Shown piece after piece: positions 33,972 through 61,399 of a DNA stretch of 64,000 nt (positions are counted from its first letter, which is position 1; every line of letters begins with the position of its first letter). The DNA is taken from NCBI GenBank assembly GCA_964252035.1, contig OZ176204.1; one strand, given 5' to 3'. The notes under the pieces are model-generated. The model worked only from the letters and a program-made list of their open reading frames with translations. It had not been told where the DNA came from and searched no databases. The position numbers were made by a program, and so were the translations under genes. Origin of the DNA: Podarcis erhardii. Lineage: Eukaryota.

Positions 33972-34031
<60 letters not shown>

Positions 34032-34890
34032 AATTATTTATTTATAGCCTGCCCATCTGGATGGGTTTCCCCAGCCCCTCTGAACGGCTTCCAACAAAAT
34101 ATTAAAATACAATAGTCTGTCAAACATTAAAAGCTTCCCTAAACAGATAAATTGGTCAAGTCATTACCATTCGCAGAACGAATCCTGTGCAATAGCACTA
34201 GGTGACCACAACGTAGAACAGCATGCGAATTTAAAAACTGGATTTTGACCTCAGCTGTCACAAAGCAGCCAGTGCAAATATGAAAGGTCCCTCCTGCGAG
34301 CGACCCCTTTGCTCACCTTTCCCAGGTGGCCCCAAGGCCACTGCGGGAGGCGCCGCGGCAGCGCCCGGAGAGATGGTGGCCCCGCTCTGGCCAAAGGTGA
34401 CCGAACTGAGCAGCACATCCCCAGAGCCGGGGGCGCCGCCGCCGGGCTCCTGCCCTTCCCCGCCATGGGACGCCTGGACTCCGGGCGCCGAGGAGCCGGG
34501 ATCCGCCGCGACCTCGTCGGCGAGCAGCCGGGCCTCCCTGCGGAGGATCTCCTCGGACTCGCGGAGGTTGCTGCGCCTCAGGAACTGCAGCACAGCCAGC
34601 AGCGTCTGCCGGTCGGTGGGCAGCTGCGAAGCGGGCGGCGCAGGGCTGGGCGCCACCGGCGGCTTCGCGTCGGCTCCTGCCGCCAACGGCTCGCCCCCTT
34701 CCGCCAGAGGAGCGGCGGCCGAGGGGGCAGAGGGAGCGGCAGCGACTCCCGCTGCCGCCGTCGCTCCCGCTGCTGCGGCCGGCGACTGAGGGAGAGCGGG
34801 AGGAGGAGGGGGTGGCGCCGGCGGCGCTCCCGCGTCGGGGTCCGGCTTCACTGTGACTGCTTCGGCCGGCTCCTCCGGCAGAGCCGCCAT
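22700..34890 (-). CDS. TAF5: Transcription initiation factor TFIID subunit 5, complete, 11 exons, 804 aa
   Basis: LisH-like DRQTLLAVLQFLRRSNL, NTD2 and WD40 repeats, C-terminus HFTRRNLLLAAGAYSPQ*; exons sum to 2415 nt with consistent phases. Confidence 0.97.
24000..24177 (-). CDS. TAF5: TAF5 exon 10
   Basis: 178 nt, GPVHSLAFSPNGRFLATGATDG...GEILAS. Confidence 0.96.
24589..24766 (-). CDS. TAF5: TAF5 exon 9
   Basis: 178 nt, LWATDHYQPLRIFAGHLADV...RIFTGHK. Confidence 0.95.
25140..25386 (-). mobile_element. Sauria-type SINE
   Basis: Reverse complement of the 40432 copy; 12-bp TSD aagggtcgtata (25128-25139, 25387-25398). Confidence 0.88.
25900..26064 (-). CDS. TAF5: TAF5 exon 8
   Basis: 165 nt, NYLLSSSEDGTIRLWSL...GGHDRVA. 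Confidence 0.95.
27363..27492 (-). CDS. TAF5: TAF5 exon 7
   Basis: 130 nt, LSLIDKESDDVLERIMDERTASELKILYGHSGPVYGTSFSPD. Confidence 0.96.
28183..28303 (-). CDS. TAF5: TAF5 exon 6
   Basis: 121 nt, GLTAVDITDDSSMIVGGFADSTVRVWSVTPKKLRSVKSAA. Confidence 0.96.
29361..29496 (-). CDS. TAF5: TAF5 exon 5
   Basis: 136 nt, IPLPELKDSDKLDKIMNMKE...FYTFLNAYQ. Confidence 0.96.
29813..30064. mobile_element. hAT-type MITE
   Basis: TIRs catgggtaggcaaact / agtttgctgacccctg; perfect 8-bp TSD tcctaata. Confidence 0.85.
30417..30580 (-). CDS. TAF5: TAF5 exon 4
   Basis: 164 nt, VFFGLLKEPEIELPLDDEDEEGENEEGKPKKKKPKKD... Confidence 0.96.
31258..31573 (-). CDS. TAF5: TAF5 exon 3
   Basis: 316 nt, FHGDQECYYQDDLRVLSSL...EAKREANKAK. 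Confidence 0.96.
32872..33106 (-). CDS. TAF5: TAF5 exon 2
   Basis: 235 nt, VEDQPDVSAVLSAYNQQGDP...AKSFFEK. Confidence 0.96.
33653..33796. repeat. 72-bp tandem duplication, TAF5 intron 1
   Basis: Two adjacent copies differing by one base. Confidence 0.9.
33862..33952 (-). mobile_element. BovB (RTE) LINE 3' end
   Basis: gttgttgtttagtcgtttagtcgtgtccgactcttcatgaccccatggacc; 12-bp TSD acagtaatatgt (33850-33861, 33953-33964). Confidence 0.75.
33972..34033. repeat. (AAT)n then (AAAT)n microsatellite
   Basis: About 17 AAT units seen directly. Confidence 0.95.
34034..34145 (-). mobile_element. LINE 3'-end fragment (L2-like)
   Basis: ttatttatttatagcctgcccatctggatgggtttccccagcc resembles a common squamate LINE tail. 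Confidence 0.45.
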
Positions 34891-35130
34891 AATGGAACCC
34901 GACAGCCTCGCCTCCAACTCAGGCAGCCCGCGGCTTTGCGACAGTGAGGGCACGGTATCCAGCCGTGAGGCCAAGGGCTGCTAGCGACAATTAGGGCGGC
35001 GCTTTACGGCACTTCCTGTTCCACTGGAGGGAAATGATTTCAAATAGAATACTGTACTGTAAAATAAAAGGAGAACTGTCTAGCGCAGGTAAATGCTCCC
35101 GATGATTCTGCGACCGTTTACTAGTTTACA
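34280..35130 (-). promoter_or_regulatory. TAF5 CpG island and promoter
   Basis: Very GC/CpG-rich; ETS-like CACTTCCTG near 35010; overlaps exon 1. Confidence 0.7.
34317..34890 (-). CDS. TAF5: TAF5 exon 1
   Basis: 574 nt, MAALPEEPAE...LLAVLQFLRRSNLRESEEILRREA...PPGK; donor gtgagc. Confidence 0.93.
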
Positions 35131-35610
35131 AGAGATTATAGGTGCGGCTTGTACAGAGGGGTCTATTCCCCAGTTGTATATATCCTATGACAAATATAAC
35201 AGGTGAAAAGTGTAACGTATACCACATTTTAAGTTGTCAGTGAGCAGGATTCTGAGATGTCTTTGAGAGAGAGTTCTGTGAAACTCGAATGGTGGTGTAT
35301 TTCTGTCTTCTGCACCCTCACACACTTAAAAGCCAATTCTAAACAACGGGTTGGCTATTTTTAAATTTATTTAGCTGAACCTCGGGATATTATATAATCC
35401 CCTTCTGTAAATTGCCTAGATTTTTCGTAGCGAGTGACCAAAAAGTCAAATATGTAACAATAATGATGTTGTACAAGCACTAAATACTGACCCTTTCACC
35501 AACGCTGGCATCAGAATGATTTCACTATGCACCCATTTCAGTTGTCTAATCAAAACTAAATAAAAAAATTCCTTCCAGTAGCACCTTAAAGACCAACTGA
35601 GTTAGTTCTA

Positions 35611-35895
35611 GGTATGAGCTTTCGTGTGCATGCACACTTCTTCAGATACTGAATGAATAGGTATGAGCTTTCGTGTGCATGCACACTTCTTCAGATACTG
35701 AATGAATAGGTATGAGCTTTCGTGTGCATGCACACTTCTTCAGATACTGAATGAATAGGTATGAGCTTTCGTGTGCATGCACACTTCTTCAGATACTGAA
35801 TGAATAGGTATGAGCTTTCGTGTGCATGCACACTTCTTCAGATACTGAATGAATAGGTATGAGCTTTCGTGTGCATGCACACTTCTTCAGATACT
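35611..35895 (-). ncRNA. Six tandem 49-bp units, each a minimal type I hammerhead ribozyme motif
   Basis: Identical units start at 35611, 35660, 35709, 35758, 35807, 35856; minus strand reads GUAU-CUGAAGA-A-GUGUGCAUGCACAC-GAA-AGCU-C-AUAC. Confidence 0.7.
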
Positions 35896-35935
35896 GGTAT
35901 CTGAAGAAGTGTGCATGCACACGAAAGCTCATACC
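35896..35935 (+). ncRNA. Minimal type I hammerhead motif, plus-strand copy
   Basis: ggtat ctgaaga a gtgtgcatgcacac gaa agct c atacc. Confidence 0.65.
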
Positions 35936-36229
35936 TAGAACTAACTCAGTTGGTCTTTAAGGTGCTACTGGAAGGAATTTTTTTATTTTGTTTTGACCAT
36001 GGCAGACCAACACGGCTACCTATCTGTAATCAAAACTGCTCTTAAGCAGTAGCCAGCGTTAAGTTTAAGAAAACCATTTTATGTATTTTATTACAATAGG
36101 AATCAAAATTCAGTTTTAAGACCAAGTACTGCTGTATTGATGTCGTTGTTATATATTTATTTGTACCCCGCCTTTTCCCGTAACTGGAACTCAAGGCGGC
36201 TTACAGGTAAAAACCCACCTTGAGTACTG

Positions 36230-36960
36230 GCTCACCGTTGCGAGAGAGAGAAAAAACTCAGTTTCCCAGAGTACATAGGGGTTGTATGTGAACGAGGCAG
36301 ATGCCCTAGAAGCGTGCGCGCCAATAGGGCTTTGCGCACGCGCCTTGAAGCTGTAGTCACGTTTAGGGAAGGATCATAGAGATAGGAAAGAAAGGACAGG
36401 AATAGTTCCTTTGGGTGGGAACTGCGTTCGCCCTCGCCGCCCCCCAGGCACTTCCTCGGTTGCTCCTTGTCGGTCGAAGCGGCCCGTGCATTTGTTTCCC
36501 TCAAAGGCGCGGCGATGAGCGAAGAGGTGGAGGCGGCCGGTGAGGGGCTGGGCGAGGGAGAGCAGCAGGACGTCGACGATGAAGAAGCGATAGCGGGTCT
36601 GGAAGCCCCGGGCTGCTCCGGGGAAAACTCCCGCTTCGAAGCGGGAAGCCGCTCAGAGTCCAGCAACGAAGAGATGGAGGAGGATGAGGAAGAGGAAGAA
36701 GAGGTGGAGGAAGAAGCAGCAGCAGCAGCTCTAGGAGGGGGGTCCACGGACCCCTTCGGGGGTTTGGGGATGGAGGAAGGCGAAGATGAGGATGAGGTAA
36801 AACAAGAGGCAGTGCGCTTAAGGGGGAGCACAGGGGCACCCTTGGGTGAAGCAGACACCATGGGGTGAGATTCCGTCGGACTAAGATGGAGAAGAAGCAG
36901 GTTCAAATCCTCCCTCCGCTGGCCTGGGATCGATCCCCATCTATCAGCCTAGCCTACCTC
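36230..36960 (+). promoter_or_regulatory. PCGF6 CpG island and promoter
   Basis: CpG-rich; CCAAT near 36321, NRF1-like GCGCACGCGC near 36333, ETS-like CACTTCCTC near 36449. Confidence 0.65.
36515..36796 (+). CDS. PCGF6: PCGF6 exon 1
   Basis: 282 nt, [10 protein letters not shown]...APGCSG...EEEEEE...GEDEDE; donor gtaaaa; start codon less certain. Confidence 0.82.
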
Positions 36961-39900
36961 ACAGGCTTGTTGTGAAGGTGGAAGTGGGAGGAGGCAACAC
37001 ATATACTTTTTCCTGGAACTCACTGATGAAAGGATGGGGATATAAATATGTAAACAGCACTTCTTATGATGCCCTGTGCCAAATATAGCCAGTGTGGTGC
37101 AGTGGCTAGAGAGCTGGGTAGGGATTTCAGATTCAGATCCTTGCTCAGCTTTGACTTTCCTTGGATACCTCTTGGGCTTCTTTCTCTTACCTAATCTTCT
37201 CCTGTGAGTTCCTTGGGAACGGTGGGATCAGGAACATAGGAAGCTTGCTTATACCAAGTCAGACCATTGGTACATTTAGCTCAATATTGTGCACACTGAC
37301 GGGCAGCCACTCTTCAGAGTTTTGAGCAATGGTCTCCCAAAGCCCTACCTAGAGATGTCGAGGATTGAACTGTGATTTTCTGCATGCAAAGCAGATGACC
37401 TACCACAGAGTTTATGGCCCTTTCCTATATACGTTTTGCTTGCTCTGTGTTTTCTCACAATGTGACATCTTTTGTGTGTCCCCAGTGAAATATTCCTCAC
37501 CATCTCCCATGGCTAGAGACAGTAATGTTTCTGAATACCAGTTGCTGGAAACTGCAGGAAGGGAGAATGTTCTGATGCTCAGGTTCTGCTTGCAGGTTTC
37601 CCATGAGCATCTGGTTGGCCACTGTGATAACAGGATACTGGACAAGATGAGCCATTGGCCATTGGCCTGCTCCAGGAAGCTCTTCTTATGCTCTTAATTT
37701 TATTTATTCTATATGTTTACATATGCTTTCACTTAAATGGTTCCCAAAGCAGTTCACAACAAAATTAAAAAGACCGTGTTCAGGAAAATCCCCACTTCAC
37801 TTCTAATGCTGTGCTTTAATCAAACAATAAACAATATACATCTTTGTATTGCTAACAAGCAAAACTTTTAAAATTGCTATTTCCCTCCTTTTTTCATGTT
37901 TGCAGCGCATGATTAACCTCTCTGAGCTGACGCCATATATAATGTGTTCTATCTGCAAAGGGTACTTCATAGATGCCACAACCATCACAGAATGTCTTCA
38001 TACATGTACGTACTAATATTAATTTCTTACTCAACAGAAGCTTTGATGTTATCTATGCAGAAATATCAAGCCTAAGTACATTTTGGTGATAATGTAAAAC
38101 AATGTTGTATTAATTGTGGTAACTGCATAGTGGTGGATGCCTCTAAGAGGGGCCCTGGAAATTCTAAACAATCCAGCTACAGTATGTCTTGGATTATACT
38201 ACCCCCACCCCAAAATTCTCCATGATCATGTTCTGAAATAAATTAAAATAAATCATTCCTTTATTTGCCTTTCATATTCAGCTTCCTAAATAGATCTTAG
38301 CACATTTTCTTCGACTTAAATAGCTACCCTGACTTCAGCTTCTGCTGCTCCTTAACCTGAATGTCATGGCTAGGCTGTAGATGACCATATGCAGATGCAG
38401 ATCTGGAGTGGGTTCTGTAATCCAAAATCCCTGGAGTCATTGGGTGACAGCTGAAGCCTGAGGTACCGCACACAGATGTTACTGCTGTGCAGACCAAGAA
38501 ATACTAGTTTTCCTTGTATTTATTCCATACTTGTCCAGCCCAGAGTCTTCATATAGCCTGCTGGTTAGGAACCTAGGAAGTTGCCTTTAATCGGGGCAGA
38601 GTATTTGTTTATCTACTCTGCCTGACAGCAGCTTTCTAAGTTCTGGTAGAGGTGTTTCACATGCTCTGGTATTTGATCCTAAACACACACACAATATAGA
38701 TGCAAAAGACTGAACCCAGGGCTTTCTGCATGAAAGCACATGTTCTACCTCAAAGTAGCTTGCTTTAGGTGCAGCTGCTGCACCTGGCTCCTCCCTTTCG
38801 GTTCTTGGACTGTGAGATGATATGCATTTTGACAGTGAAAGGAATAAGGAGTGCCCAGCCAGGCAACAGACCATTCTGTTTGCAGCAGCTGGGAAAGTAA
38901 GAGGGATAAAAGACAGTGGGAAGAGTTGCAGTAATTTGAGGGGGAGGGTTATATACCACCTCAGAGTAGCATTGGGAGTTGGAGCAGCTAGAACAAGCAT
39001 AGGCAAATTCAGCCCTCCAGATGTTTTGGGACTACAACTCTCATCATCCCTAGCTAACAGGATCAGTGGTCAGGGATGATGGGAATTGTAGTCCCAAAAC
39101 ATCTGGAGGGCCGAGTTTGCCTATGCCTGACCTAGAATCAACCTTAATAAAAATTGTATTATTTTATGTAAACATGTTGTGGATCCTTCAGTATGAAAAG
39201 GGAGAGATTGATATCAAGTAAATACATATTGCATACCACTATTCAAGACTTATTCTTAATAACGTTTTTCAGTAAGATTTTAGTAAGCCTTTGAAATTTT
39301 GTATCGAAAAGTAGGGCAGAAATCGATTGAAAAAGTTTTTATCCTCCACACGCACACATTTTATTTCTACAGTTTCTCTGCATTTTAGGTGACACATGCT
39401 ATATATTCTGTGTTATCTTTGGAACTTGTGTACTACTACATTATAGGCCTGTAACTGCAAAATTTATCTTCTACAGTCTGTAAAAGCTGCATAGTAAGAC
39501 ATTTTTACTACAGTAACAGATGCCCAAAATGCAACATTGTAGTACATCAGACGCAACCCCTTTATAATATCAGGTAATATATTTTAATTATAATTGTTTA
39601 TCTATATTTTGTGTGTGTGTATGTAAAAGAAGCAATGGTTTTCAGATAACACTGATATTTCTATTTTGGACTAAAATATATTATTGGAACTTGAAAAATA
39701 CTTCTAACTTGCTATATGCACTGGAGGGAAGCGTTGCTGTCTCATAAAAGGTCTAGCACCTCACACAATTCTTAATTCCCTTTTTTGTTTACCAACAAAA
39801 GTTTTCCATATCCTAAAGATTTGCCTCCCTGGTCTTGAAACTTTCCCACACAAGGGTTGTTTGAGACTTCTTATTTCCTCTGGTGCGCCAGTGCATTGCT

Positions 39901-54900: not shown

Positions 54901-57900
54901 AATGAGATACAGATTGCAAATGGCATGTACACAGTGTCCACAGAGAACTGGCGCCCAGGAGCTCCTGCGTTATTTAATTAAAATGATTCTTGGACACCTG
55001 CTCATGTTAACAAGTTTAACCACACCTGTTCTGAAGGGATATTTGCTTTGAACAAATGGAATTTGAACATGGAATTTCTTGAGATATTTATTGACACATC
55101 CACTGAACAGTACAAAATGAAGTTAATATTTGAACAAAGTCCAAAGTCATTGGAGTTAATAAGATAGGAAAAGGATATTTAAAGTAGTTAACAGAGAAGC
55201 AATAAGTCTTACGAAGCTGGGACAGGGGGTGCTGTCTTCAAACGAACTCAATCTGTTTAGGCGTGTGCTTTACATGTTTATAGCTGCTTGTTACTTTACA
55301 GTGCTATTGCAGGCAATGGGTTCAATAAAAACTTGTGTTTTGAAGAGATCTCTTGCCAAATCCTCAAATTGCTTTTTGAAATTGGGACTATAAAAGAGTA
55401 GTTTTGAGGTCCTGGAGATCATTTCTGGAGATGAAATAGATACATAAAATGTGTTCTCAAAGAGCCATTGAGTTAAAACTTTAAAGCCCCTAGCTTGTTG
55501 CAGCTAAAGAAAACACATTTTGATACTTTTTTCTGTTTATTTCTAGGTAGACATAATATGTGGTGATCACCTGCTGGAACACTATCAGACTTTGAGGGAA
55601 ATCCAGCGAGCTCTAGGGGAGAGTGCAGTGCAGGTAAGTTGATGCCACAGCTGCAAGGGAATTGCCTCTGGTGCTCCTGCCTCAGCCTCCCATACACTCC
55701 TTGGGGATATACCCAAGCATGGCATTTGCTGGGAAAGCTTCTGAGTTGTGAACCTTTAAGGCAAAAGTGTGCATGAGTCCAGCAGTGGCAATGGCTGAAG
55801 TGGAGCGTCTGGCTTTTACCAACGTCAAGTTTGCCTGTGTGTACAGATGAGCACCTCCCTTTTGTGTGGAAGACACTGCTCCCCACTGTTTTGGGGAGGA
55901 ATGTTGCAGCAGCACTGTTGAGGCAGGACAAGAGTATTCAAATCTAGCAAAAAAGGGGTGAAGAGAGACAGGTGTCAGGTGCACCAGTTAAACATCATAG
56001 CATGTGTTTCTCCTTCTCTTGCTTACCTGTGTGAGGTGTAGCTGTTGAAGTGGAATGGGGCTGGATATACAGTATGTGTCCAGAGTACCGAAGTGAGATA
56101 CATATTAGGATTGTGAGATAAGAAGCATTAGCAATGTGTTCAGCTTCCCATGTGTGTTCTGAGGCCAAGTGCATCTAATGATCTTTTGATGTGGACAGAG
56201 TGGTCACTGACTTAAGCGAGAGGGAAATCTTATGCCAGGTCTGGCATTGATGTAAAGTTACCTGTCAACCAGGATTGAAGGGCTATAGGATACAGCGCAA
56301 GTGTGCTCCTCCTCTGTACTATTCTGCCTTGCCCATGACTCCACCCCATTTTATCTGTTCTGACAGCATTCTGTTGTGCTGCTGGCATATTTAGAAGCTG
56401 GCCAGGATAGCAAGCCTTCAGCCAAATCCTATAGCATCTTAGCCAACAGAACTTAAGTATAGGACTGCTTCTTAAGTCTAGCTGAGTCTTCATGTAGTGT
56501 TTAAATGGCTTCTACCAGCACATTACTTTAAAAAAATAAACAAATTTCAGGTATCTGAAGAAGTGTGCATGCACACGAAAGCTTATACCCAGAACAAATT
56601 GAGTTGGTCTCTAAGGAGCTACTGGACAATTTTTTAATTTTTTAATATATTTTGACTGCATCAGACCAACACGGCTACCTACTTGAATCTAAATTTCAGG
56701 CTGTTATGGTTTAGAGCGTTGTTGTTTTTAATGAAAGCAGTCTCTCCCAGTCTAAAGACATAAAAGGGTATATCATGGATCTCCTAGTAGGTTGAGGAAA
56801 AGGAAAATTCACCAACTCTGTTATCCTTGGTGAATGTGCTCTGATCTAGGCATACTGCAGGCTAAGCATGTGCTTCTGCATTCACAGATCAACCCTGCTG
56901 AACAGGTGGTTGGCTCTGTCTGCTTTGTATGCACTAATCATTTGTTAGGACAGTGGTGGGTAGAGTGTGCATCTGGAATCAGAACTGACAATGCTGATCT
57001 TGTACTTTAGCATTCAAGAGTATTGTGTACCAGTGATAGCAGGTGCTGGGTGCAACCGCTGCCCATTGTAGGGCAGGATTATTTTGCATACTCTGGTCAC
57101 ATCTAGAACGGCAGTCATTGTAGAAGCCTCTTTCTACACACATATTGTCTTTGCTTGATCACAGCAGTAATGTAGAATTCTTACCACATTTTAAAATCGT
57201 ACAATATAAGGACAATTGAAAATAAAAAAAAATAAGATACATTTTATAATCTGGTGGCTCTTTTAATCAAATATAAGGATAGCTTGCTGAATTACTGAAT
57301 TAAAATAACCTGTTTTACAGGTTGAATTGTTCATTTCTCACTTTGGTGCATAAGTGCTAATTTTGCATTCTAGACAAGGTGTCAGAATGAAGTGTAATCA
57401 GTAGAGAAAGGTGTTATACAGCAGTACATTTTTTTAAAATTTATTTTGCTCATAGGTGATGTTTTGTTTGATGTTGTAGATCTTTTCTAGCCAACACATC
57501 TCCAACATTTGAACACAGTATATGTCAGAAGAAGTCACAATCACAGCATTGCCTTTCACACCTAATAGTAGCCTGTCAGGAAATTGTGACAGACTTATGG
57601 CAAGGCTAAACCTATCATAAGGCACCATTTCTGTATATCCAAACTTCCATGCTAGGGCTGCATATAAAACTGTTGTGATTTGGCTGATTTCAATGGCTCA
57701 ATTATGCAGTCAAATGGAGGTTGCCAGTTGACTCCCTATGGCTTTTGTACAGACTTGCCAATAAGTATGGACCAACCCTATATATAACCCCAAAGCAGTG
57801 CCTGCTTTTTCATTTACTCCAGCAGTTTGTTTCAGGGAAATTGCATTCTATAACACTTCGTCCTGGGATCGAAAGCTGAAGCTTCCTTATTGAGAATGAC

Positions 57901-60946: not shown

Positions 60947-61175
60947 CACAGTTACAGATAGGTAGCCGTGTTGGTCTGCCATAGTCAAAACAAAACAAAT
61001 TCCTTCCAGTAGCACCTTAAAGACCAACTAAGTCAGTTCTTGGTATGAGCTTTCGTGTGCATGCACACTTCTTCAGATACCAGGTATCTGAAGAAGTGTG
61101 CATGCACACGAAAGCTCATACCAAGAACTGACTTAGTTGGTCTTTAAGGTGCTACTGGAAGGAATTTGTTTTGTT
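60947..61175 (-). mobile_element. PLE-derived element with a perfect 93-bp-arm palindrome
   Basis: Arms 60989-61081 and 61083-61175, 1-nt spacer; 12-bp TSD atgattactaaa (60935-60946, 61176-61187). Confidence 0.82.
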
Positions 61176-61399
61176 ATGATTACTAAAGAAAGGTAGATAA
61201 ATTAATTCTATTATTTGCTTTGAACTTCAGTGTGAAAGATGGCGGGCAGGTGCTATGTCTCATTCCCCCACTGACCCCAAGAAAGGTATCTGAAAAACAA
61301 AGCTAAATAGAAGTGACGAAAACTGAAGTTGTAGAACTATCTACAAATCACTGGGTCCAATTGAATATTTTCTAACAAAAATATTAAATTTGTTTAAAA

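What the first reader, a model, noticed from the sequence alone, without database searches (positions are those of the whole stretch)
35611..35935. Tandem array of six minimal hammerhead ribozyme motifs (49-nt period) in the divergent TAF5-PCGF6 promoter gap
Seen: six identical 49-bp units. Each minus-strand unit reads GUAU (stem I), CUGAAGA (core), A, a self-complementary stem II GUGUGC-AU-GCACAC, GAA, a loopless palindromic stem III AGCU, the cleavage base C, then AUAC (stem I partner). A seventh copy lies on the plus strand at 35896-35935. Known: Penelope-like element pLTRs carry minimal type I hammerheads whose palindromic stem III lets two copies cleave as a dimer, as in newt satellite 2, and tandem hammerheads define retrozymes that make circular RNAs. 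Inference: adjacent units supply dimer partners in cis, so a minus-strand transcript could be cut at CUC/AUAC into 49-nt monomers, much shorter than described animal retrozyme units. The array lies about 720 bp from the TAF5 ATG and about 620 bp from the PCGF6 ATG. Upstream antisense RNA from the PCGF6 promoter would cross all six motifs in the active sense, so it might truncate RNA heading into the TAF5 promoter. Possible origins are rolling-circle reverse transcription, telomerase-like template re-use by the PLE RT, or slippage at a hairpin.
Basis: partly seen in the sequence, partly recalled or inferred. Interest (0 to 1): 0.82.

Follow-up and report, generated by a model that had tools for sequence, protein, structure and literature searches.

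The report
Reiterated hammerhead motif in young Penelope insertion
The six hammerhead-ribozyme motifs are really there, but they are the repeated tip of a very young Penelope-type retrotransposon insertion that other sampled animals lack, so a role at the TAF5/PCGF6 promoters is unsupported.

Summary
A perfect 49-bp array lies at 35609-35896 (5.9 copies, 100% identical). It carries six complete minimal hammerhead (HHR) motifs on the minus strand, with a seventh on the plus strand. TAF5 and PCGF6 flank it divergently.

The motif meets every sequence feature published for Penelope-like-element (PLE) minimal hammerheads. No Rfam hammerhead model detects it.

The array is not a free-standing element. 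It is the tip-proximal part of one arm of a canonical PLE head-to-head inverted insertion (35559-36026). That insertion has an 11-bp target-site duplication and a roughly 30-nt "tail" on one arm only. The window holds two more copies of the family, neither with an array.

Contigs from two other samples join 35546 directly to 36027, which is the empty site. Words spanning the unit junction had about zero depth in all four runs laid. The insertion is therefore young and lineage- or individual-specific, and the array has no independent read support.

Interior units keep only 4 bp of helix I. Predicted folds are dominated by a 14-bp inter-unit palindrome and a roughly 102-bp hairpin.

A 2026 preprint already lists vertebrate retrozyme units down to 51 bp.

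Other unchecked first-reader notes in this genome list inverted and short tandem hammerhead pairs.

I read the hammerheads as passengers of a reiterated retroelement end. Interest is modest.

The parts
35548..35558 (.). Left copy of the 11-bp target-site duplication TAATCAAAACT. Its last 7-8 nt also match the element's short 3' end (microhomology).
   Evidence: Identical 11-mer at 36027-36037. Empty-site contigs join 35546 to 36027. The inverted-repeat arm extends to 35550 with 1 mismatch.
35559..35649 (-). Short arm of the inverted PLE-derived insertion. The element is sense on the minus strand and lacks the tail. It contains the first hammerhead motif (35612-35649).
   Evidence: 100-nt arms are 99% complementary. 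Alignment A1 shows it ends at the same element position as the short arm of the copy at 61 kb.
35609..35896 (-). 49-bp tandem array, 5.9 perfect copies. Each unit is 41 nt (the whole hammerhead domain plus UA at the base of helix I) plus the 8-nt filler TGAATGAA. The fillers lie at 35650-57, 35699-706, 35748-55, 35797-804 and 35846-53.
35612..35894 (-). Six complete minimal hammerhead motifs, each 38 nt: 35612-49, 35661-98, 35710-47, 35759-96, 35808-45 and 35857-94. The predicted cleavage site follows GCUC and precedes AUAC.
   Evidence: Descriptor scan, with 0 hits in 100 shuffles. Exact-core search.
35895..35896 (.). 2-nt tip (TG) of the palindrome. It equals the first two letters of the filler.
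   Evidence: inverted pair I6 has 2 nt between its arms
35897..35996 (+). Long arm, the part shared with the short arm. It carries the seventh hammerhead motif (35896-35935) in sense on the plus strand.
35997..36026 (+). The roughly 30-nt 'tail', present on this arm only. It contains the AC-rich stretch CAGACCAACACGG.
   Evidence: Alignment A1. Family contigs end at two places, 35990-35996 and 36029-36030 (table 7). A one-sided 30-40 bp tail is a PLE hallmark.
36027..36037 (.). Right copy of the target-site duplication.
34258..34890 (-). TAF5 exon 1 coding part, with the ATG at 34890. It lies in a CpG-rich block (65-76% GC).
36515..36868 (+). Candidate PCGF6 exon 1 coding part (acidic N-terminus). 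Exon 2 with the RING start lies at about 37900-38010. An RNA contig of a relative reaches 36311.
60951..61176 (.). Second head-to-head copy of the same family. It has a 2-nt tip, no array, the target-site duplication ATGATTACTAAA, and the tail on the left arm.
56550..56690 (+). Single-arm copy of the family. It starts at the hammerhead 5' edge, has the long 3' end, and has U instead of C at position 17.

Best explanation
The locus is a very young, extremely 5'-truncated Penelope-like-element (PLE) insertion of the usual head-to-head inverted kind. Both strands of an AT-rich target (TAATCAAAACT) were used to prime reverse transcription of a roughly 100-130-nt RNA. That RNA's 5' end is the edge of the minimal hammerhead. 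One arm started at the long ('tail') RT start site and the other at the short site. On the short arm, the 41 nt next to the palindrome tip (the complete hammerhead domain) plus an 8-nt filler were reiterated to six copies.

My committed reading, which is inference, has two steps. One junction with its filler arose at or soon after integration. That 49-bp unit was then amplified at the DNA level by slippage or unequal exchange beside a fork-stalling palindrome.

The six hammerheads are passengers of this reiteration. They are plausible but weak dimeric ribozymes. There is no evidence that they cleave, make 49-nt RNAs or regulate TAF5/PCGF6.
For: - Anatomy: 100-nt arms are 99% complementary, with an 11-bp target-site duplication. 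The roughly 30-nt tail sits on one arm only, and both short arms in the window end at the same element position.
- Family ends: contigs of the family begin at 35895-35897 and end at two sites about 33 nt apart (table 7).
- Literature on structure: these are the published PLE hallmarks, namely an inverted 5'-truncated copy, a target-site duplication of about 9-10 bp, and a one-sided 30-40 bp tail.
- Literature on mechanism: a lizard PLE protein nicks and extends both target strands at AT-rich sites and has two internal RT start sites.
- Youth: arms and units are identical. Empty-site contigs occur in two other samples at 0.6-2% flank divergence.
- Passenger status: unit ends cut helix I to 4 bp, against 5-6 bp in native copies. 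All five fillers are identical, so they were copied from one junction. Junction words had about zero depth in four runs, whereas the family arms are extremely abundant.
- Weak ribozyme prospects.
Against: - The sequence motif is flawless in all six units, and tandem copies are exactly what a dimer-dependent hammerhead needs, so activity cannot be excluded in silico.
- Nearest-neighbour energies ignore tertiary contacts, proteins and co-transcriptional folding. They disfavour the double hammerhead for native family copies too.
- Going from 2 to 6 units needs several DNA-level events on a young allele, which is less parsimonious than a single integration-associated event.
- The origin of the 8-nt filler is unexplained.
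- Contigs show presence, not absence.
Confidence: 0.7

Rival explanations
1. One-step origin by the PLE reverse transcriptase. After reaching the RNA 5' end, the enzyme jumped back across the base of helix I and re-copied the 5'-terminal 49 nt (an 8-nt leader plus the hammerhead domain) five more times, in a telomerase-like way. It then switched to the other cDNA.
For: - The array abuts the palindrome tip, where the template ends. The last unit stops after TG, which is in phase with the filler.
- The unit equals the whole helix-I-closed hammerhead domain, so the RNA 5' end and nt 41 are neighbours in the fold (native monomer MFE).
- PLEs are known for template jumps and complex tandem/inverted insertions, and their RT is sister to telomerase RT.
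- One event is more parsimonious for an allele this young.
Against: - Identical fillers require a templated 8-nt leader, yet family copies begin at 35895-35897 without it (table 7).
- There is no complementarity between the filler and the re-entry site (read directly from the sequence).
- The long arm shows no leader.
- No other copy in the window is reiterated.
Confidence: 0.2
2. The array is a functional mini-retrozyme. Minus-strand RNA, for example PCGF6 upstream antisense RNA, self-cleaves through adjacent double hammerheads into 49-nt units and so limits transcription running into the TAF5 promoter.
For: - There are six intact motifs in tandem, sense on the minus strand.
- The double-hammerhead topology is nested and feasible, with an 11-nt loop 1.
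- The array would pass the operational retrozyme definition of the 2026 preprint.
Against: - The insertion is absent from two other samples.
- No RNA contig covers the unique flanks in the one RNA run laid, which comes from a relative that may lack the insertion.
- Helix I is only 4 bp.
- The double-hammerhead fold scores -10.4 kcal/mol against an MFE of -30.6. One unit is locked in a roughly 102-bp hairpin.
- Minimal hammerheads are weak or protein-dependent.
- No Rfam hammerhead hit appears even at E up to 10.
Confidence: 0.06
3. Assembly artefact. The insertion is real, but the six-fold reiteration was created by mis-assembly or read errors at a palindrome.
For: - None of the listed runs holds more than 0.69 of the sampled words.
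- Junction words had about zero depth in four runs.
- Published work notes that PLE tandem/inverted structures cause assembly problems.
Against: - The units are perfect and in phase, with a novel 8-nt filler that errors would not invent five times.
- The runs laid appear to lack the whole insertion, so they cannot test the array.
Confidence: 0.08

Closest known systems
Minimal hammerheads of Penelope-like elements (Cervera & de la Pena 2014, PMC4209133)
   Same: It shares the CUGANGA and GAAA boxes, the unpaired nt between positions 9 and 10.1, and the G10.1-C11.1 pair. Helix II is long and helix I short. Helix III is only a palindrome (AGCU), so two copies are needed. The motif also occurs as opposite-strand pairs and as dispersed solo copies.
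   Different: Here six copies sit 11 nt apart in a perfect array. Helix II plus its loop forms a full 14-nt palindrome that can pair between units.
Canonical PLE insertion architecture (Arkhipova 2013, PMC3846280; Craig 2021; Frangieh 2024, PMC11167929)
   Same: It shares the head-to-head inverted 5'-truncated copies, the target-site duplication of about 10 bp, the AT-rich target, the 30-40 nt tail on one end, and the two RT start sites.
   Different: There is no ORF or full pLTR; only the last 100-130 nt are present. Tip-proximal reiteration of a 49-bp unit was not mentioned in the papers read here.
Animal non-LTR retrozymes (Cervera & de la Pena 2020, PMC7229834; Li, Clavereau & Pollet 2026 preprint)
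   Same: Both are tandem repeats with a type I hammerhead in every unit, are PLE-derived, and mostly have 7 or fewer units.
   Different: Described RNAs are about 170-400 nt and catalogued consensus units are 51-972 bp. This unit is 49 bp, is known from one locus only, is embedded in a palindrome, and has no expression or circle evidence.
Double hammerheads of newt satellite 2 and viroid-like RNAs (Forster 1988, as cited in PMC4209133)
   Same: An unstable helix III is made stable by pairing two tandem copies.
   Different: Those units are hundreds of nt, are transcribed, and have been shown to cleave. Here cleavage is untested and a competing fold is predicted.

Membership tests
PLE-type minimal type I hammerhead motif | Conserved core boxes CUGANGA and GAAA, with H (not G) at position 17 | tested here: met
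   All seven copies have CUGAAGA, GAAA and C17. Copy B has U17.
PLE-type minimal type I hammerhead motif | [quoted passage not shown] | tested here: met
   An extra A follows CUGAAGA, and helix II opens G...C. The features are as listed.
PLE-type minimal type I hammerhead motif | Helix III reduced to a palindrome (15.2-16.2) with no loop; long helix II; helix I of 4-5 bp | tested here: met
   The palindrome is AGCU. Helix II is 5 bp plus a CAUG loop. Helix I is 4 bp in the array and 5-6 bp in native copies.
PLE-type minimal type I hammerhead motif | Covariation across family members supporting the helices | tested here: inconclusive
   Only five near-identical arms are available in the window, so no compensatory change can be scored.
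PLE-type minimal type I hammerhead motif | Self-cleavage as a dimer | not testable with these tools
   Only energies were available. The double-hammerhead fold scores -10.4 against an MFE of -30.6 kcal/mol.
Rfam hammerhead families (covariance models) | Match to a curated hammerhead model | tested here: not met
   No hammerhead family matched at E up to 10 in 34000-37500. Nothing reached gathering score in the whole window. My inference is that the loop-less helix III explains the miss, a feature that made Cervera & de la Pena write a special descriptor.
Penelope-like element insertion | Target-site duplication and an AT-rich target | tested here: met
   An 11-bp duplication is present, the empty site is seen in two samples, and local GC is 37-40%.
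Penelope-like element insertion | Adjacent inverted 5'-truncated copy, and a 30-40 nt tail on one end only | tested here: met
   (two family 3' ends); definitions
Penelope-like element insertion | RT plus GIY-YIG ORF between pLTRs | tested here: not met
   The insertion is 480 bp with no ORF. It is a terminal fragment or non-autonomous derivative, not an autonomous PLE.
Animal non-LTR retrozyme | Tandem repeat with at least 2 consecutive units that each hold a complete hammerhead (the operational definition in the 2026 preprint) | tested here: met
   definition. The unit MFE of -7.8 kcal/mol also passes their -5 cut-off.
Animal non-LTR retrozyme | The unit forms a dispersed, mobile family | tested here: not met
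   Junction-spanning words had about zero depth in four runs, while the family arms are hugely abundant. The caveat is that contigs show presence, not absence.
Animal non-LTR retrozyme | [quoted passage not shown] | not tested
   No RNA run from a carrier of the insertion was available. The single read-laying run was already used.

The most novel reading that the evidence does not exclude
The array may be a natural record of telomerase-like repeat addition by a Penelope reverse transcriptase. On this reading the RT made six reiterated copies of the RNA's 5'-terminal hammerhead domain in a single integration event. The resulting 49-nt units would then be the smallest hammerhead tandem able to cut itself into unit-length, possibly circular, RNAs.
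Probability: 0.12. Interest if true: 0.7.

Novelty: new member of a known kind. Interest (0 to 1): 0.3.

Why it matters
If the array is real, it is the shortest hammerhead-bearing tandem unit I could find against the literature read here: 49 bp against a reported minimum of 51 bp.

It sits exactly where a PLE reverse transcriptase runs off its template. It could therefore inform how PLEs build their tandem and inverted structures.

As a filled/empty polymorphism between two CpG-island promoters, it is also a convenient natural test of whether such an insertion perturbs divergent transcription.

As it stands, it is one young copy of a very abundant lizard repeat, with no evidence of function.

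Tried and rejected
- Rfam at E up to 10 gave only spurious miRNA-hairpin hits caused by the palindrome, and no hammerhead. Rfam at gathering score over the whole window gave nothing.
- The bacterial promoter/terminator scan is irrelevant to a vertebrate locus.
- A single-exon RING regex failed. A looser motif search then found PCGF6 exon 2.
- I looked for the family's hammerhead in the PAc (Anolis Poseidon) supplement. It was not found, so this family is not PAc itself.
- I tried to derive the 8-nt filler from the element, from snap-back copying of TTCA, from the target site, and from the 5' flank of copy B. None gave a convincing template.
- I considered a helix-II-swapped dimer as an active form. 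I rejected it on geometry: A15.1 and U16.1 of one unit cannot pair across 2 nt, and 3-nt linkers cannot span a 14-bp helix.
- The thermodynamic argument cannot separate the array from native copies, because both disfavour the double hammerhead.
- Copy number could not be checked. All runs are held as contigs, the one read-laying run was used, and the samples laid seem to lack the insertion.

Full report
**Observation**

The sequence at 35609-35896 is a perfect tandem array with period 49, 5.9 copies, 100% matches and no indels. A structural descriptor finds six complete motifs on the minus strand. They start at 35612 and recur every 49 nt up to 35894. It finds one on the plus strand at 35896-35935. 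The descriptor required:
- CUGANGA, then an optional unpaired nt
- helix II of at least 4 bp, then GAAA
- a loop-less palindromic helix III, then H17
- helix I of at least 3 bp

One hundred shuffles gave none.

Helix II is 5 bp closing CAUG, because a 2-nt loop is impossible. Helix I of the array units is only 4 bp.

The gene context is right. TAF5 exon 1 lies on the minus strand with its ATG at 34890, and it matches PDB TAF5 residues 1-142 at E 1.3e-11. PCGF6 lies on the plus strand, and its exon 2 matches the PCGF6 RING at E 1.4e-15. Two CpG-rich blocks flank a spacer of 37-40% GC that holds the array.

**What the motif is**

Cervera & de la Pena 2014 defined minimal hammerheads of Penelope-like elements (PLEs). 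The features that emerged beyond their descriptor were:
- an unpaired nt between positions 9 and 10.1
- a G10.1-C11.1 pair
- palindromic 15.2-16.2 with no loop 3
- a long helix II and a helix I of 4-5 bp

All of these are present here. No Rfam hammerhead model scores even at E up to 10, and the only hits are miRNA models responding to the palindrome. Nothing reaches gathering score anywhere in the window. I file the motif under the published minimal-hammerhead class by sequence features only. Catalysis is untested.

**What the array is part of**

The array is not free-standing.
- A 100-nt inverted repeat (35550-35649 against 35897-35996, 99% complementary) encloses it.
- The right arm runs on about 30 nt further, to 36026.
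- The whole 480-bp block is flanked by the 11-bp direct repeat TAATCAAAACT (35548-58 and 36027-37).

The window holds two more copies of the family. One is a single arm at 56550-56690. The other is a head-to-head pair at 60951-61176 with a 2-nt tip, its own 12-bp target-site duplication and no array.

Aligning the five arms shows three things:
- Every copy begins at the 5' edge of the hammerhead.
- Long arms end at ...GGCTACCTATCTG(TAA).
- The two short arms both end at ...TTTTGA.

Thousands of family contigs in four sequencing runs show the same picture. Loose ends pile up at 35895-35897, the 5' end. They also pile up at two 3' ends, 35990-35996 and 36029-36030 (table 7).

These are the published hallmarks of PLE insertions: an adjacent inverted 5'-truncated copy, a target-site duplication of about 9-10 bp, and a 30-40 bp 'tail' on one end only. 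The in vitro work on a lizard PLE adds supporting mechanism. That protein nicks and extends both target strands at AT-rich sites. It starts reverse transcription at two internal sites a tail-length apart, near an AC-rich stretch about 110 nt beyond the hammerhead region.

Here the short arm starts with 7-nt microhomology between target and element (TCAAAAC). Both arms of each pair are identical to each other but differ between the two pairs. Each pair therefore comes from one event.

**Age and population status**

- In run X1 (organism A), one 1210-nt contig maps to 35297-35546 and 36027-36450 with adjacent contig coordinates.
- In run X4 (organism B), a 1018-nt contig does the same (table 8).

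Both are precise empty sites, with flanks 0.6-2% different from the window. The insertion is therefore absent from at least one allele in two other samples. Together with the identity of arms and units, this makes it very young.

Bins inside the array (35686-35783) have depth 0-2 in all four runs, whereas the arms reach summed depths of 1e5-1e6. So the 49-bp junction is not a family feature in those genomes. It also means the six-unit count has no support independent of the assembly. The best run holds 0.69 of the sampled words, which is what flanks plus arms without junction words would give.

**Would it cleave?**

The double-hammerhead topology for adjacent units is nested and possible. Helix I(b) closes an 11-nt loop, AGCU pairs with AGCU, and there are two helix II hairpins. 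It evaluates at -10.4 kcal/mol, against an MFE of -30.6. The MFE is dominated by the 14-bp duplex between the palindromic helix II segments of neighbouring units, with pair probability 0.998.

The whole insert, on either strand, folds as a hairpin of about 102 bp. This buries one unit against the antisense copy, and the other five pair through those palindromes.

The same preference holds for two native monomers: -20.1 for the trans double hammerhead against -39.6. The calculation therefore says the family as a whole is a poor ribozyme by nearest-neighbour rules. It does not say the array is special. The one thing specific to the array is that its unit boundary removes the fifth (G-C) pair of helix I.

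Published data point the same way:
- A Schistosoma minimal hammerhead cleaved weakly, and only as a dimer or trimer.
- The lizard PAc hammerhead cleaved only with its protein, was dispensable for insertion, and left no reads ending at the cut site.
- Only 1 of 9 Xenopus retrozyme dimers cleaved.

**Origin of the array**

Each unit is the 41 nt from the RNA 5' end to just past helix I, plus the filler TGAATGAA. The last unit stops after TG, at the palindrome tip. Five identical fillers cannot be five independent non-templated additions, so they were copied from one junction or from a template.

- Model 1, which I favour narrowly: one jump with a filler happened at integration or during tip repair. 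DNA-level slippage or unequal exchange beside the palindrome then amplified the unit.
- Model 2: the RT re-copied the 5'-terminal 49 nt of an RNA carrying an 8-nt leader six times. Helix I places the 5' end next to the re-entry point, and one event suits a young allele. Against it, family copies lack that leader, and the filler has no complementarity to the re-entry site.

I could not find a template for the filler.

**Comparison and novelty**

Described animal retrozyme RNAs are about 170-400 nt. A 2026 preprint catalogues vertebrate retrozyme consensus units of 51-972 bp, with a reptile mean of 176 bp and mostly 7 or fewer units. It uses a definition (a tandem repeat found by Tandem Repeats Finder with at least 2 complete hammerheads) that this array would pass. 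The array is therefore a new, extreme-small member of a known kind rather than a new kind.

Other first-reader notes in this genome list about 280 hammerhead findings. They include palindromic back-to-back pairs and short tandem pairs. I could not read or check those sequences.

**Function at the promoters**

An RNA contig of a relative places the PCGF6 5' end at or upstream of 36311. Nothing covers the unique flanks of the insertion site in that run. That organism may not carry the insertion, so this says little. Absence of the insertion from other samples rules out a conserved role. An allele-specific effect is possible but untested.

**Limits**

- There was only one read-laying run, all runs are contigs, and no carrier RNA was available.

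Noticed in passing
window 60951-61176: A second head-to-head pair of the same PLE-derived family. It has a 2-nt tip, the target-site duplication ATGATTACTAAA, and the roughly 31-nt tail on the left arm only. Its two arms are identical to each other but differ from the 35.6-kb pair at about 5 positions, so they belong to a different subfamily source.
   Followed up: partly
window 56550-56690: A single-arm family copy with U instead of C at the predicted cleavage position 17 (still an allowed H). It also has several changes downstream of the hammerhead. Its 5' flank ends in TTTCAG, which resembles a 3' splice site.
   Followed up: partly
window 35895-35897, 35990-35996 and 36029-36030: Thousands of family contigs in four runs share one sharp 5' end at the hammerhead edge and two 3' ends about 33 nt apart. 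This suggests a discrete RNA of about 100-130 nt whose 5' end is the first base of helix I. A possible source is short cDNAs made from the 5'-proximal RT start site of PLE transcripts.
   Followed up: partly
window 35970 back to 35904 (run X7, table 5c): One contig from another organism goes back from 35970 to 35904 with AAA between. That is a head-to-tail repeat of about 70 nt of the hammerhead-bearing segment at some other locus.
   Followed up: no
window 36677-36716: A GAGGAAGAAGAGGAA 15-bp repeat (2.7 copies) lies inside the acidic N-terminal coding part of the candidate PCGF6 exon 1.
   Followed up: no
window 35242 and 35265: Organism B's contig has a 12-bp insertion (AACTCATCAGTA) behind 35242 and a 2-bp deletion at 35265 in the TAF5-proximal spacer. 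Run X1 shows half-depth reference-identical contigs there, which hints at heterozygosity.
   Followed up: no
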